Made by a program: the position numbers and the translations under genes. Positions 47,601 through 51,601 of a DNA stretch of 64,000 nucleotides are shown here, one piece after another. The notes under the pieces are model-generated. The model did not search any database, was not told the DNA's origin, and saw nothing but the letters and a program-made list of their open reading frames with translations. Numbering within the stretch: the first letter of the stretch is position 1; every line of letters begins with the position of its first letter. Source of the DNA: Guillardia theta CCMP2712 (Eukaryota; Protista; Cryptophyta); assembly GCF_000315625.1 (NCBI RefSeq), contig NW_005434622.1:463697-527696 (forward strand), written 5' to 3'.

Positions 47601-48724
47601 CCGATCCCTTCGTGCGCGTCACCGTCGCCGGCCAGCTGTACGAGAGCAAGGTGATCAAGCAGAGCAGCAGGCCGGAGTTCCACGAGACTCTATCCTTCAA
47701 CCTCTTCTCTGAGGATCTCACCAAGCCGCTCACCCTCGAAATCCTCGACTGGGGCAACAGCAGGGGAGGAGGAGGAGGAGGAGGAGGAGGAGGCTTCCTA
47801 GGCATGGTCCAGTTTCAGCTCCACCAGCTGCTGCTGAGCAACAGCTCAGCCAACGGTTGGTTCCCCCTCCTCGACAGGTCACTCAAACCCATCGACCTCG
47901 ACGATCAGCACCCTGCTCGCCTCTGGCTGCGCGTGCGCTGCATCCTCCGTTCGGAGACGCGCGATGGAGAGTCCGAGTACGGGCTGAGCACGCGGCCCAG
48001 CAGCTCAGGTACTCCGGCGCAGAGAAGCTTCATGGACCCCAACGACGTTGAAGAAGACGAAGACACGGAGGAGGAGCAGTGGGGGATGGCGCAGGAGGAG
48101 GAGGAGGATGAGAACAACTTGATGCAGTTCCTCGGAATTGACGACAGCCGTGCTAAGGCCGGGAAGAGGGAGGAGAGGTCAAGAGCTGTCACGTCCAGGT
48201 CAGCCAGGAAAGCCTCCGGGGGCAGCCTCTCGAGCTCGAACGCGGGAGGGTCGGGGGGAGGGAAAGTCCTGACTGAGTCCGAGGAGCTGCAGGTCGCCAG
48301 GCTGCAGAAGAAGATGGAGAAAGCGGCAGCGAAAGGAAATGTCGCCGTCGCCGAGCAGTACCGCAAGGACATGCTGCGGCTGCAAGGGCTGGACTACCTG
48401 TCCTCCCAGGAGATCTCAGAAGGCGTCAGGAGCTCGAGCGTCGAGCTGGAGCTGGATCAGGATGAAGCTGCCAGCGGTGAGGAGGAGGAGGAGGAGGAGC
48501 TCGGAATGTACGACCCTCTCAATCAGGGCATGCGCAACGACTCTTCGAACATGGCCTCCTCCAGCTACGGTGGTGCAAGCGGCTCCTATCGCTCAGAGTC
48601 AGTACAAGGAAGTCTGAGATCGCAAGAGTCGCGACTGACGCAGGAGGAGGAGCAGAAGGAGGAGGAGGGAGAAAAGTCGAAGAAGAGCATCTTTGCTCGT
48701 ATGAATCCTTTCAAGAAGAGATGA
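44665..48724 (+). CDS. MORN-repeat + EF-hand + tandem C2 domain protein
   Basis: MORN repeats (YEGGYKEDKKHYKG, YTGEYKDGKPSGRG); EF-hands DTDGNGYLSWKE and DINKDGQISIAE; two C2 domains (LDVTIIQCRNL..SLNPVFDQTF; PDPFVRVTV..PEFHETL). Confidence 0.85.
44733..45071. repeat. Intronic 17-bp minisatellite (CATGTTCGCCCACTTCA)n with duplicated leader
   Basis: Three copies at 44763-44813 and 12 full copies plus a partial at 44859-45071. Both blocks follow the same ~30-nt leader. Confidence 0.95.
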
Positions 48725-48749: not shown

Positions 48750-48900
48750 ATGAGTAAACTTGAGTCGACACTGAAGTCACCGGACCCGACGGCCACCAGG
48801 CCCCGGGGCCCGGCCGGCTACCGGGCCGGCTGGTTTTACTCAGAGTGACTCACTGACCGTCAAGTTGGACTCCGGGAACTTCGGAACGGTAGTGAGTTTG
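48750..48900. promoter_or_regulatory. GC-rich island upstream of the EsV-1-7/AP2 gene
   Basis: GGCCCCGGGGCC palindrome, GTTTTACTCAG and TGACTCA. Confidence 0.5.
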
Positions 48901-49121
48901 TACGATCCCCTCATCCCCTTTCAGACCCCAGAGGTTGGCCCCCATTTTGCGCCAAGCGATGCAAGGCTGGAGGGGTGAGAGGGGCGGGGAGAAGAGGAGG
49001 CAGCAGACGGGAGGTGCAGGGAAGAGCGAAGAACACAAGCGAGCGAGAAAGAAGAGAGCGAGGGAGCTTGCAGAAGAAAACTGTCATCAAAGAAGAGCTT
49101 CCAGTTCTTCAGTCCCATGAG

Positions 49122-51601
49122 ATGTATCGCCGAACTGGCATCAAGAAGCCCTATCTCGTCATTCTGCTCTTCCTCGCCATGGATGTGCGAGGCAGAGGAG
49201 AACGTCAGATCGTTGACAATATGGTATTCGATGAAATCAAGCACGTCCAACACATTGCCAGCAATGGAATCGTTAAGTGTTCAAGCTGTGGAAATCTCAG
49301 GAACGCACAAATTAGTTCCATAGAGAATTGCAAGGGCGAAATGTGTCTGAGCTGTCTCAAGTCAACAGAATTTCTTTCTATTTGCTGAAGAAAAAGTGCT
49401 CTGTGTGCGAGAAGAGGGCGCGTTATGGTCCCAGTATCTTCGACCCCCTTCGATGCCGATTGCACAGGTTCGTTCAGCTTCAGCAAGTCGTCTGTGAGAT
49501 GTGAGTAGGGAGGACTGATAAGTGTGCAGGGAGGAGGGAGACAAGGTATCTAGTGCTCTGATATGTAAATACGACGATTGCTTGCAGAAGGCAGGTAAAC
49601 CCACACCGCACACGTGATGTCAATCCTGGATAAGCACGACCGACCTTTGTTTGTAGTCTACGGAGATCCGTCGAGAGGGAGGGCAACATACTGCAAGGTC
49701 TGCACGCAAGTGACTATGTTGACCGTGATCACGAAGCACTAGGAGCACAAGAACGCTTCGCACGTGAACCTTCGGAAGAAGAGATGTCAGGTTGCCCGTG
49801 TGTTCATGGCGACCAACCTTCTCTTGATTCAGACGCACAGCACCCGGAAGGATGTTCGAGGCCCTCGGTGTTCGGGACGTCGATCCCGTTGTTCTGCGGG
49901 GAGCACAAGGGGAGAGGAGACATCGCTCTGAGGTCCCATGCTGCCCCGTCCCCCCTTGGTTGCCTGACTCCGGTCGCAGCGGCACCAGATGCCAGAGATT
50001 TGGATGCATCAAACAAGTCGCGCGAGACTTCTTGTCCATCACCTCCTTGGCTGACATGCTCCCTAGGCCTCTTTTGGCAATGTTGAGGACGGAATCGTCA
50101 TGTACTGCCTACGGCACAAGGGAGAAAATCACACGGTGAGAGATTGAGGAGGACGAGGAGGAGGGGAGGGGAGGGGAGGGGAGGGGAGGGGAGGGGATGA
50201 ATTTGTTCCGGAAGTGACTCTCAGCAGTACCTTAGGAGTGTCCGATGCAAGTACCCCGAGGGATGCACTAGATGGGCGACCTTCGGCAATCAGAACGCAA
50301 GGTAAGCGCTGCTGCTGCTGCTGCTTCTGCTGCTGGCGGTGCTGCTGCTGCTGCTGGTGCTGCTGCTGCTGGTGCTGCTGCTGGTGCTGCTGCGCTTCTG
50401 GTGGAGGAGGTGGTGGGTTGAGAGAGTGAGGTGAGCTGGCAGTGGGGCCCCGCTCTTTTGCCTGGAGCATCGGGATGTTGGGCAGGTCTGTTGTGCCGGG
50501 GACAGCGGAGGGCTCAACAAACGTGTGCGTAGGTGAGAGTGACAGGAAGGAACGAGAGCGCGCGATCGCAGCGGGAGCTGTGCGAGTTCTGTCTCCGCAA
50601 GGTCCTGCTCCTGAGCGAAGCCTGTTCCTGCTGCGTTGACACGGGCACGCAGATCTCGAGGAGGAACATGGCGAAGCACTTGAAGGTCGAGAAGGCTCGG
50701 CGGCTCCCTAGTGCCCCGGGGGCTGAGACTGGCACTGCAGGGGAACTTCTGCAAAGTGAAGGGCCTGGTGGCGATGCAGATGGCGAGAAACCGATTCGGT
50801 GATGGGAGGAGGAGGAGGGGGAGGAGGGGGAGGGGGAGGGGGAGGACGAGGACAAGGAGGAGGAGGAGGAGGAGGAGGAGGAGGAGGAGTCTCGGTGATA
50901 AGGGCCCAGGTCGAGATGTGACGGAAGCACTCAAGGGGAGGTCAGTCGGCAGACATCCGTCGCTGCAATCAGCTCCCGCACCTCCGGCTGAGGTCAACAG
51001 GAGTTGTCAGGGGTCAGAGAGTTGAGCAGGTTTCCAGATCTTCATCAATAGCGGGGAGGAGAATCGGACTGTAGCCCTCTTAGGAAACTTCACCTCCTGC
51101 TGCCTCAAGTAGGGCTGCTGTCGTGGCCATGGACGAGGAGGGTTGTCACGAGCTCCTGCAGGTGCCAGCAGAACAAGAAAGGTATGCGGTACTGCAGATT
51201 CGTCAAGAAGCACCTGGTGTGCTTTCGACTTCTCTGCACAAGAATCTCGTGTCATGCAGCGCTTGCAGGAGCCAGGAGGGAATGTGGTATCGCTGGAGAA
51301 GCGAAAGACTAGTCAGTACCTCGGTCTGTCTTCTCAGAGAGGCTTCCTCCCTTGCCTGATTTCCTCTCTTCAGGGGTAGGATGGAACGAGCAGAAGCGCA
51401 AATGGAGAGTGCGAATGACCACGGACGGCAAGACGCTTCATGTTACCCATATTTGCATTATTTATCTGCACTCCTGATGTCTTGCTGTAGGTTGGATTCT
51501 ACGACAACGAACTTGAAGCTGCACAAGCGTATGACCACTTTGCAATGTCTCGCAATGTTTCTACCAAGTTAAATTTTCAAGACTCGAAACGTGTAAATTA
51601 G
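49122..51601 (+). CDS. EsV-1-7 cysteine-rich repeat protein with C-terminal AP2/ERF DNA-binding domain
   Basis: Repeats of the C..EGC...A.FG....FC..HK type (HPEGCSRPSVFGTSIPLFCGEHK; CQRFGCIKQ|ASFGNVEDGIVMYCLRHK; CKYPEGCTRWATFG). Spliced AP2: SQYLGVGWNEQKRKWRVRMTTDGKTLHVGFYDNELEAAQAYDHFAMSRNVSTKLNF. The start is uncertain. Confidence 0.8.
50308..50392. repeat. Intronic (GCT/GGT)n trinucleotide tract
   Basis: Lies inside a GTAAGC...GCAG intron at about 50302-50441. Confidence 0.85.

What the first reader, a model, noticed from the sequence alone, without database searches (positions are those of the whole stretch)
49122..51601. EsV-1-7 repeat array fused to an AP2 domain, with a possible signal peptide
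Seen: multiple Cys/His repeats, a clean AP2/ERF domain split over three terminal exons and invisible in the ORF track, and an N-terminal basic-then-hydrophobic stretch (MYRRTGIKKPYLVILLFLAMDVRG). Known: EsV-1-7 repeats are named for a phaeovirus protein, are expanded in brown algae and cryptophytes, and have no established molecular function; AP2 binds DNA. Inference: the fusion suggests the repeats act on nucleic acid. If the leader is real, this is a candidate host-encoded transcription factor sent to the nucleomorph.
Basis: partly seen in the sequence, partly recalled or inferred. Interest (0 to 1): 0.78.

Follow-up and report, generated by a model that had tools for sequence, protein, structure and literature searches.

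The report
Cryptophyte EsV-1-7/AP2 fusion with signal leader
This Guillardia theta nuclear gene really does join a secretion-type leader, five or six EsV-1-7 zinc-finger-like repeats and one AP2 DNA-binding domain in a single protein that other cryptophytes also have, which makes it a good but untested candidate for a host-encoded regulator sent to the alga's relict second nucleus.

Summary
Window 49122-51601 (+) is the CDS of the public Guillardia theta model GUITHDRAFT_111551 (356 aa, "hypothetical protein"). That model already joins the MYRRTG leader, the EsV-1-7 repeats and the AP2 domain.

- **Domains:** on the public protein, EsV_1_7_cys scores 65 bits. AP2 scores 25-28 bits (E 2e-6), below Pfam's cut-off. 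An AlphaFold model of the AP2 region has the three-strand, one-helix fold, and its ten best PDB matches are all AP2 domains.
- **One gene:** the fusion does not rest on splicing. In a Baffinella-like marine cryptophyte, one uninterrupted genomic ORF runs from the last EsV repeat into the AP2 domain (E 2e-60). A second relative has everything in one 610-aa ORF.
- **Gene model:** the public model is imperfect. I propose 19 exons, 18 GT-AG introns and 416 aa, restoring four repeat exons.
- **Leader:** all four family members start with a short, very hydrophobic signal-like N-terminus with no aromatic residue after it. This is the cryptophyte pattern for periplastid rather than stromal import.

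Targeting, DNA binding and any nucleic-acid role of the EsV repeats remain untested. No RNA reads could be obtained.

The scan holds a separate note (s1-437349, not followed up) on another AP2/zinc-finger protein with a signal peptide elsewhere in this genome. I found no paralogue.

The parts
49122..51601 (+). Whole coding region. Refined model: 19 exons, 18 GT-AG introns of 45-167 nt, 416 aa. The public model GUITHDRAFT_111551 (356 aa) has the same start and stop.
   Evidence: Colinear tblastx chain to the orthologue locus L006, summed E 5e-26.
49122..49223 (+). Exon 1, the leader. Residues 1-24 look like a signal peptide: n-region RR..KK, h-region YLVILLFLAM. They are followed by RGERQIVDNM. 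The next aromatic residue after F17 is Y46.
   Evidence: The orthologue leaders are equally hydrophobic. The exon 1/exon 2 junction is supported by alignment to L008.
49117..49119 (+). An out-of-frame ATG 5 nt before the annotated start. It opens a 68-codon ORF, 49117-49323.
   Evidence: Its effect on initiation is unknown.
49391..49467 (+). Exon 2: first repeat, a C-x2-C variant of EsV-1-7 (KKCSVCEKRARYG...RCRLH). It is missing from the public model.
   Evidence: BLASTP to the orthologue ORF in L008, E 5e-7. Alignment.
49530..49790 (+). Exons 3-5 (49530-49594, 49657-49697, 49743-49790): EsV-1-7 repeat 2. Exons 3 and 4 are missing from the public model.
   Evidence: tblastx HSPs at 49659-49694 and 49746-49790.
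49841..49932 (+). Exon 6: EsV-1-7 repeat 3 (its first Cys lies at the end of exon 5).
   Evidence: Pfam PF19114, 21.7 bits on the exon alone. Own-genome scan hit at C52:513534-513623.
49980..50135 (+). Exons 7-8 (49980-50016, 50067-50135): EsV-1-7 repeat 4. The public model skips exon 7 and reads on into the intron that starts at 49933, as far as 49972.
50228..50485 (+). Exons 9-10 (50228-50301, 50443-50485): EsV-1-7 repeat 5.
   Evidence: Pfam 19.1 and 14.0 bits on the two exons. Aligned to P0119 residues 1-37.
50533..51216 (+). Exons 11-16: conserved linker. It holds a CxxC...ISRRNMAKH...C element, a GRDVTEALKGR..RHPSL..PAP.AE.F motif and a C-x2-C...KKG...C...H element. It has no Pfam family.
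   Evidence: Colinear with the single ORF P0119 at 45% identity, E 2e-60, and with P0115 and P0116.
51269..51601 (+). Exons 17-19 (51269-51323, 51374-51441, 51491-51601): AP2 domain and stop codon.
   Evidence: The last exon alone retrieves the public protein at 100% identity and about 110 AP2 proteins.
51129..51131 (+). ATG in a good context (gccATGg) inside intron 15. It would be the start of a separate AP2-only gene under the rival reading.
   Evidence: Disfavoured, because conserved coding exons flank it in one colinear chain.

Best explanation
This is one intron-rich nuclear gene of Guillardia theta. It is single-copy and conserved in other cryptophytes.

Its product has, in order:
- a cleavable-type ER signal peptide and a short, basic, aromatic-free stretch;
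- five EsV-1-7 Cys/His repeats plus a C-x2-C variant, with conserved C, C, C, H spacing (presumed zinc ligands);
- a conserved Cys-rich linker;
- one divergent AP2 domain at the C-terminus.

Most likely mechanism (inferred, not shown). The leader takes the nascent protein into the ER lumen, the first step of import into the cryptophyte complex plastid. With no aromatic residue at the start of the transit-peptide-like part, the protein would stop in the periplastidial compartment. Basic patches could then take it into the nucleomorph. There the AP2 beta-sheet would bind DNA, and the EsV-1-7 array would add either further nucleic-acid contacts or partner binding.

Shown: gene structure, domain identity, conservation of the architecture and conservation of the leader.
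Inferred: cleavage, compartment, DNA binding and the role of the repeats.
For: - **Public protein.** EKX42579.1 / L1J365 is encoded here.
- **EsV-1-7.** 65.3 bits.
- **AP2.** E 2e-6. The protein keeps every invariant or near-invariant column of a 42-sequence AP2 alignment. The model has pLDDT 82 with three strands and a helix. The ten best PDB matches are all AP2: TEM1, WRI1, AtERF1 (TM 0.72 by target) and ERF96.
- **Fusion is real.**
  - P0119 is one 224-aa genomic ORF present on 24 or more marine metagenome contigs. It aligns to P0004 residues 122-329 at 45% identity, E 2e-60. That stretch spans nine G. theta exons, from the last EsV repeat into the AP2 helix.
  - P0115 has the EsV repeats, the linker and an AP2-like end in one 610-aa ORF.
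  - The P0119 contig is from a cryptophyte: a neighbouring 583-aa ORF is 80% identical to a Baffinella frigidus protein and 41% to one from Hanusia phi.
- **Gene model.** 18 canonical in-phase introns give an uninterrupted 416-aa ORF.
- **Leader.** The peak 10-residue hydropathy is 2.91 (G. theta), 2.95 (P0116), 3.66 (L008) and 2.36 (P0115). The median of 118 other fetched proteins is 0.8. P0116 and P0115 have in-frame stops upstream.
- **Precedent.** G. theta nucleomorph histone H2A carries a signal peptide plus a transit-like part without an aromatic +1 residue (PMC5443833).
- **Single copy.** Neither the AP2 exon nor P0119 finds a paralogue in the genome.
Against: - The 5' end, the exon 1/exon 2 junction and the start codon therefore rest on phase, orthologue alignment and the public prediction.
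- An out-of-frame ATG lies 5 nt upstream of the start.
- SignalP or ASAFind was not available. The signal peptide is judged from simple physico-chemical measures only.
- In G. theta only about 10 residues separate the hydrophobic core from the first zinc-finger cysteine. That is a very short transit-like part. The orthologues have about 55-95 residues there.
- The leader lacks the LxLRGG ending that other (unchecked) notes of this scan find on periplastid leaders.
- AP2 scores below Pfam's gathering cut-off. In P0115 and P0119 it is not detected by Pfam at all.
- The taxon of the P0115 and P0116 contigs is not established.
Confidence: 0.5

Rival explanations
1. An ordinary host-nuclear AP2 transcription factor. 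The hydrophobic N-terminus is not used, because the 5' exon is mis-modelled or because translation starts at a downstream Met (M34, the last codon of exon 1, directly before the first repeat).
For: - AP2 proteins are normally nuclear.
- There is no RNA support for exon 1.
- An out-of-frame upstream ATG at 49117 could disturb initiation at 49122.
- A Met sits 1-3 residues before the first repeat cysteine in all four family members.
- Dual targeting through alternative N-termini is documented in algae with complex plastids (PMC4494062).
Against: - The leader is kept in four diverged orthologues, with upstream stops in two of them.
- No other in-frame ATG would include all the repeats.
- Only 2 of the roughly 100 M-initial AP2 proteins fetched reach a hydropathy peak of 2.5.
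Confidence: 0.22
2. A periplastid- or plastid-targeted RNA-binding protein rather than a transcription factor. The AP2 domain and the zinc-finger-like repeats would bind RNA, for example nucleomorph transcripts or ribosomes.
For: - Four AP2 proteins of Toxoplasma are integral RNA-binding parts of the mitoribosome (PMC11652630).
- T. gondii mitoribosome chains appear among the structural matches of this AP2 model: 9g6k, 9i05, 9hqv, probability 0.85-0.93.
Against: - The best structural matches are DNA-bound plant AP2 domains.
- There is no similarity to the apicomplexan mtAP2 proteins beyond the fold.
- Nothing links EsV-1-7 repeats to RNA.
Confidence: 0.12
3. A secreted or ER-resident cysteine-rich protein. 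The signal peptide works, but the protein stays in the secretory pathway and the AP2-like part has another role.
For: - The signal-like leader.
- The very short transit-like stretch in G. theta.
- Many cysteines.
Against: - The conserved C, C, C, H spacing looks like zinc ligands, which suits a reducing compartment.
- The AP2 fold is a nucleic-acid-binding module.
- P0116 and P0115 have long Ser/Ala/Pro/Arg-rich stretches after the signal, typical of transit-like sequences.
Confidence: 0.06
4. Two genes: an EsV-1-7 protein ending at TGA 50800, and a small AP2-only protein starting at ATG 51129.
For: - The open frame 50533-50799 ends in a stop codon.
- ATG 51129 has a strong context.
- The stretch between them is low-complexity GGAGG sequence.
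Against: - Every small exon between 50533 and 51323 is conserved, in order and in frame, with one uninterrupted ORF of the orthologue, E 2e-60.
- P0115 shows the same single ORF.
- ATG 51129 falls in a canonical 53-nt intron.
Confidence: 0.03

Closest known systems
AP2/ERF DNA-binding domain proteins (plant ERF, TEM1 and WRI1; apicomplexan ApiAP2)
   Same: Three-strand sheet plus helix. The conserved YxGV..W, G.F, EAA.AYD and LNF positions are present. The best PDB matches are all AP2 domains.
   Different: A single, divergent domain that scores below Pfam's gathering cut-off (28.3 against 33.3 bits). It sits at the C-terminus behind a signal-type leader and an EsV-1-7 array. That architecture was absent from the other 113 closest AP2 cluster representatives.
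EsV-1-7 cysteine-rich repeat family (Ectocarpus IMMEDIATE UPRIGHT, phaeovirus EsV-1-7, giant-virus proteins)
   Same: Repeats of about 38 residues with C-x4-5-C ... FG ... C-x2-H. Pfam PF19114 scores 65 bits. The family is large in G. theta too: at least 147 six-frame hits.
   Different: In Ectocarpus, no EsV-1-7 gene carries any other Pfam domain (preprint 10.64898/2026.04.27.720984). Here the repeats are fused to a known DNA-binding domain and preceded by a signal-like leader. The repeats are split by introns.
[quoted passage not shown]
   Same: A nuclear-type protein with an N-terminal signal peptide and a following stretch that lacks an aromatic residue at +1.
   Different: H2A has a clear function in the nucleomorph, whose genome lacks that gene. 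For this protein neither the target nor the need is shown, and its transit-like part is very short in G. theta.
Toxoplasma mitochondrial AP2 proteins mtAP2-1 to 4 (PMC11652630)
   Same: AP2-domain proteins sent into an endosymbiont-derived compartment.
   Different: Those proteins bind rRNA fragments inside a ribosome and have mitochondrial presequences. There is no sequence relationship beyond the domain fold.

Membership tests
AP2/ERF domain (PF00847) | Profile match at or above Pfam's gathering score (33.3 bits) | tested here: not met
   24.7 bits on P0004 and 28.3 bits, E 2.1e-6, on the domain alone. The match is significant but below the cut-off. The orthologues P0115 and P0119 are not detected.
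AP2/ERF domain (PF00847) | Three-stranded antiparallel sheet packed on one helix | tested here: met
   AlphaFold2 model from 42 sequences, pLDDT 82, with E17-20, E25-32, E35-42 and H45-58. The Foldseek top 10 are all AP2 domains, probability 1.00 for 9 of the 10 (0.87 for 3igm_B). AtERF1 (1gcc) gives TM 0.72 by target and rmsd 2.4 A.
AP2/ERF domain (PF00847) | Conserved signature positions (G-V after the first aromatic, G before F, E-AA-A-D of the helix, N-F at the end) | tested here: met
   Every invariant or near-invariant column of alignment A2 is reported at a residue of the G. theta sequence: G16, V17, G40, E45, A48, A49, A51, D53, N66, F67.
AP2/ERF domain (PF00847) | Sequence-specific binding of double-stranded DNA | not testable with these tools
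   Needs DAP-seq, PBM or EMSA.
EsV-1-7 cysteine-rich repeat (PF19114) | Profile match above the gathering score (25 bits), in tandem copies | tested here: met
   65.3 bits in three stretches on P0004. There are four sub-threshold exon hits by reference. The refined model has five repeats plus a C-x2-C variant.
EsV-1-7 cysteine-rich repeat (PF19114) | Invariant C, C, C, H positions (presumed zinc ligands) | tested here: met
   C3, C9, C25, H28 and C43, C48, C65, H68 are invariant in 23 two-repeat units. Zinc binding itself was not tested.
Cryptophyte periplastid/nucleomorph presequence (signal peptide plus transit-like part without aromatic +1) | N-terminal cleavable signal peptide | tested here: inconclusive
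   Four basic residues, then an 11-residue core with mean hydropathy 2.91. This is conserved in 4 of 4 family members. No SignalP or TargetP run was possible.
Cryptophyte periplastid/nucleomorph presequence (signal peptide plus transit-like part without aromatic +1) | No Phe, Tyr or Trp at the first position after signal cleavage | tested here: met
   There is no aromatic residue between F17 (inside the core) and Y46, so any plausible cleavage site gives a non-aromatic +1. The rule is as quoted in PMC5443833.
Cryptophyte periplastid/nucleomorph presequence (signal peptide plus transit-like part without aromatic +1) | Transit-peptide-like stretch of useful length and net positive charge | tested here: inconclusive
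   G. theta has only about 10 residues (RGERQIVDNMKK) before the first repeat. The orthologues have about 55-95 residues rich in Ser, Ala, Pro and Arg.
Cryptophyte periplastid/nucleomorph presequence (signal peptide plus transit-like part without aromatic +1) | Leader ending in the ubiquitin-tail motif LxLRGG (proposed only in other notes of this scan) | tested here: not met
   The leader reads DVRGRG. There is no LRGG in the first 60 residues.
Cryptophyte periplastid/nucleomorph presequence (signal peptide plus transit-like part without aromatic +1) | Experimental localisation in the periplastidial compartment or nucleomorph | not testable with these tools
   Needs a GFP fusion or immuno-EM.

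The most novel reading that the evidence does not exclude
Cryptophytes keep a dedicated host-encoded regulator, sent through the ER into the relict red-algal cytoplasm (possibly with a leaderless host-nuclear isoform from the conserved downstream Met). It binds the nucleomorph genome through an AP2 domain helped by EsV-1-7 repeats. That would make EsV-1-7 a new class of nucleic-acid-binding zinc finger and would give the first named transcription factor through which the host nucleus controls nucleomorph genes.
Probability: 0.3. Interest if true: 0.82.

Novelty: new variant of a known kind. Interest (0 to 1): 0.6.

Why it matters
- **EsV-1-7 function.** EsV-1-7 repeats form one of the largest gene families of brown algae, include the developmental regulator IMM and are common in giant viruses. 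They have no known biochemical activity. In Ectocarpus they never occur with another domain. A conserved natural fusion to a DNA-binding AP2 domain is the first architectural hint that they work in a chromatin or nucleic-acid setting, and it offers a tractable protein for testing that.
- **Nucleomorph control.** How the host nucleus controls the few hundred nucleomorph genes is unknown. Nucleomorph genomes encode few specific transcription factors (PMC6559170). A single-copy, cryptophyte-conserved AP2 protein behind an import-type leader is a concrete candidate that can be localised and put through DAP-seq.
- **Limits.** The gene model is already public. Signal-peptide-bearing nuclear-type proteins are a known class in this alga. 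Nothing here shows localisation or binding.

Tried and rejected
- **Joined model.** On the operators' instruction, the refined 416-aa joined model was assembled and aligned only inside local scripts. Database searches used single exons by reference and the stored public protein P0004.
- **AP2 pieces.** The single AP2 exons give nothing in Pfam. The last exon gives only a weak WRI1 hit in the PDB, E 0.38.
- **Rejected idea on exon 1.** I first thought that 49270-49362 (CSSCG...CLSCLK) was a conserved coding element that needs a frameshift. BLASTP to the orthologue gives only E 0.048, and the exon 1/exon 2 junction aligns well without it. I now treat it as intron 1.
- **Other fusions in the genome.** The four unsplit AP2 hits are not next to EsV hits. 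The L001 AP2 gene shows no zinc-finger exons.
- **Synteny and neighbours.** tblastx shows no shared neighbours with the orthologue contig. Two neighbour proteins find nothing in G. theta.
- **Fold of the EsV-1-7 repeat.** A confident model gave only insignificant matches to other zinc modules such as nsp13 ZBD, RING and FYVE.
- **ESM Atlas.** The large EsV-1-7 clusters are viral, and none combines the repeats with AP2.
- **Literature.** No paper links EsV-1-7 functionally with AP2: the two that hold both terms are versions of one brown-algal expression study, each term once. None combines EsV-1-7 with Guillardia, and none names GUITHDRAFT_111551. Curtis et al. 2012 is not held, so I could not check its predicted periplastid proteome for protein 111551.
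Full report
**What is there**

The window is G000:C52:463697-527696 of Guillardia theta CCMP2712. Between 49122 and 51601 on the + strand lies a chain of short exons.

Single exons taken by reference give sub-threshold hits to Pfam EsV_1_7_cys at four places: 21.7, 17.8, 19.1 and 14.0 bits. The three last exons read, across two introns of 50 and 49 nt, as an AP2 domain...SQYLG | VGWNEQKRKWRVRMTTDGKTLH | VGFYDNELEAAQAYDHF...LNF. None of the three pieces hits Pfam alone. The last one finds only the AP2 protein WRI1 in the PDB, E 0.38.

**The public model**

A library-wide phmmer search with the last exon (36 aa) returned one 100% match at the C-terminus of a 356-aa protein, P0004. This protein is EKX42579.1 / XP_005829559.1 / UniProt L1J365, "hypothetical protein GUITHDRAFT_111551". 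The fused gene model is therefore already public, but it is unnamed and I found no paper that discusses it.

On P0004, EsV_1_7_cys scores 65.3 bits (E 4e-18). AP2 scores 24.7 bits (E 2.8e-5) against a cut-off of 33.3.

**Is the AP2 domain real?**

- The domain alone scores 28.3 bits, E 2.1e-6. Of 42 aligned relatives, 29 are Pfam AP2.
- The G. theta sequence keeps all invariant and near-invariant columns of that alignment.
- An AlphaFold2 model (pLDDT 82) has three strands and a helix.
- Its ten best Foldseek matches in the PDB are all AP2 domains: TEM1, WRI1, AtERF1 (TM 0.72 by target, rmsd 2.4 A), ERF96 and PF14_0633.

I file it as a divergent AP2 domain. The fold and the signature are met. 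Pfam's gathering score is not.

**Is it one gene?**

Comparative evidence answers the question instead.

- The word-index searches found three relatives.
- P0119 is a single 224-aa ORF on genomic contigs from at least 24 marine metagenome assemblies. It aligns to P0004 residues 122-329 at 45% identity, E 2e-60, with few gaps. In G. theta that stretch covers nine exons, from the last EsV-1-7 repeat through a conserved Cys-rich linker into the AP2 sheet and the start of its helix.
- P0115 (610 aa, one ORF) has four Pfam EsV repeats, the same linker and an AP2-like end.
- tblastx between the orthologue locus and the window gives a colinear chain of ten exon-sized HSPs.
- The contig that carries P0119 is from a cryptophyte. 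A neighbouring 583-aa ORF with no Pfam family is 80% identical to a Baffinella frigidus protein and 41% to one from Hanusia phi. No non-cryptophyte names appear among its hits.

The rival "separate AP2 gene from ATG 51129" is therefore very unlikely. That ATG sits in a canonical 53-nt intron between two conserved exons.

**Refined gene model**

Mapping P0004 back to the DNA and comparing it with the orthologues shows three faults in the public model:
- it skips three exons: 49391-49467, 49530-49594 and 49657-49697;
- it skips 49980-50016;
- it reads on into the intron that starts at 49933, as far as 49972.

A model of 19 exons with 18 GT-AG introns (45-167 nt) gives an uninterrupted 416-aa ORF. 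It has a C-x2-C variant repeat plus five EsV-1-7 repeats, each matching an orthologue repeat.

**The leader**

- ATG 49122 is the first in-frame ATG of an open frame that begins at 48849.
- The N-terminus has four basic residues, then an 11-residue uncharged core (YLVILLFLAM, mean hydropathy 2.91). That is too short for a membrane anchor.
- All three relatives also begin with such a core: P0116 MPRRRIRTHAVCVLLLAAAAGSVAG (2.95), the L008 orthologue MRIAVIVLVLALVQLVAP (3.66) and P0115 from its second Met (2.36). The median for 118 other fetched proteins is 0.8.
- P0116 and P0115 have in-frame stops upstream.
- P0116 and P0115 follow the core with long Ser/Ala/Pro/Arg-rich stretches, as transit-like sequences do.
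- In G. theta, no aromatic residue occurs between F17 and Y46. Whatever the cleavage site, position +1 is non-aromatic. That is the published mark of periplastid rather than stromal proteins in cryptophytes, as for the nucleomorph histone H2A (PMC5443833).

Points against the leader reading:
- the transit-like part in G. theta is only about 10 residues;
- an out-of-frame ATG lies 5 nt upstream of the start;
- the leader lacks the LxLRGG ending that other, unchecked notes of this scan describe for periplastid leaders;
- no signal-peptide predictor could be run.

**The EsV-1-7 repeats**

G. theta has at least 147 six-frame hits to the family. Only this locus joins the repeats to AP2:
- the four unsplit AP2 hits in the genome are elsewhere;
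- the AP2 exon and P0119 find no paralogue;
- none of the other 113 closest AP2 cluster representatives has the repeat pattern;
- the large EsV clusters of the ESM Atlas are viral and lack AP2.

A two-repeat AlphaFold model is confident (pLDDT 83.6), and the C, C, C, H positions are invariant. It matches no solved fold: Foldseek E > 2, VIA Z <= 2.3. The idea that the repeats act on nucleic acid rests on the fusion alone. A 2026 preprint states that no Ectocarpus EsV-1-7 gene carries another Pfam domain, which is what makes this fusion informative.

**Mechanism and rivals**

Best reading (confidence about 0.5 for the whole chain, about 0.9 for gene and architecture):
1. co-translational entry into the ER;
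2. passage into the periplastidial compartment;
3. nucleomorph import through basic patches;
4. DNA binding by AP2, with the repeats adding contacts or partners.

Rivals:
- a host-nuclear factor whose leader is unused or bypassed from the conserved Met just before the first repeat (0.22). Dual targeting by alternative N-termini has precedent (PMC4494062);
- an RNA-binding organellar AP2 protein like the Toxoplasma mitoribosomal mtAP2s (0.12; PMC11652630; structural hits);
- a secretory Cys-rich protein (0.06);
- two genes (0.03).

**Verdict**

What is new is a cryptophyte-conserved architecture (signal-type leader, EsV-1-7 array, AP2) and a corrected gene model. It is a new variant of known kinds, not a new kind.

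The scan also holds a separate note (s1-437349, not followed up) on an AP2/zinc-finger protein with a signal peptide on another piece of this genome, and several notes on other nuclear-type proteins with leaders. The general pattern is therefore not unique to this gene.

Noticed in passing
window 49224-50066: The public model GUITHDRAFT_111551 is inaccurate here. It omits four conserved repeat exons (49391-49467, 49530-49594, 49657-49697, 49980-50016). It also reads on into the intron that starts at 49933, as far as 49972, adding 13 spurious residues.
   Followed up: yes
window 50150-50197, 50306-50385, 50803-50892: Three introns hold microsatellite-like runs: (GGAGGG)n, (GCT)n and (GGAGG/GAG)n. 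They create long spurious open frames on both strands in the ORF list.
   Followed up: no
window 49221-49223 (M34); P0115 res. 128; P0116 res. 116 and 165; L008 about 5344: A Met sits 1-3 residues before the first cysteine of the first repeat in all four family members. It could serve as a downstream start giving a leaderless isoform, or it may mean nothing.
   Followed up: partly
L013 (G000:C43:77200-79600, minus strand): A 604-aa open frame holds more than twelve canonical, phaeovirus-like EsV-1-7 repeats (C.F.GC.K.P.YN.EGET.GLYC..HKEEGMINV). Three are near-identical degenerate copies. It gives the strongest PF19114 hits in the genome, up to 60.8 bits.
   Followed up: partly
L012:17765-19513 (-) and relatives P0123-P0131: A Pfam-less 583-aa protein family is seen in cryptophytes only (Baffinella 80%, Hanusia 41%, G. 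theta C59 54% over 163 aa). Several members begin with signal-like hydrophobic N-termini.
   Followed up: no
L004 (JGI 3300050671 contig, 2745 nt): The first and last 170 or so nucleotides of the contig are nearly the same sequence. The contig is therefore a circularised or tandem assembly product. The 610-aa ORF itself is not affected.
   Followed up: no
L005:1990-2053: P0116 ends in a GT-started, TG-rich stretch just after the conserved HPESF motif. This is probably an intron, so the AP2 part of this orthologue lies beyond the end of the contig.
   Followed up: partly
G000:C332:9076-9210, C45:179708-179842, C1:1051438-1051980: Only four AP2 domains in the 87-Mb genome are detectable within single exons. 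The C1 locus has two detected AP2 hits (a third AP2-like stretch by eye) in one 455-aa open frame, and the C332 locus has two. None has EsV-1-7 repeats nearby.
   Followed up: partly
window 47612-48724: The upstream neighbour ends 400 nt before ATG 49122. It is a 370-aa open frame rich in Gly, Ser and Glu runs. I did not examine it.
   Followed up: no
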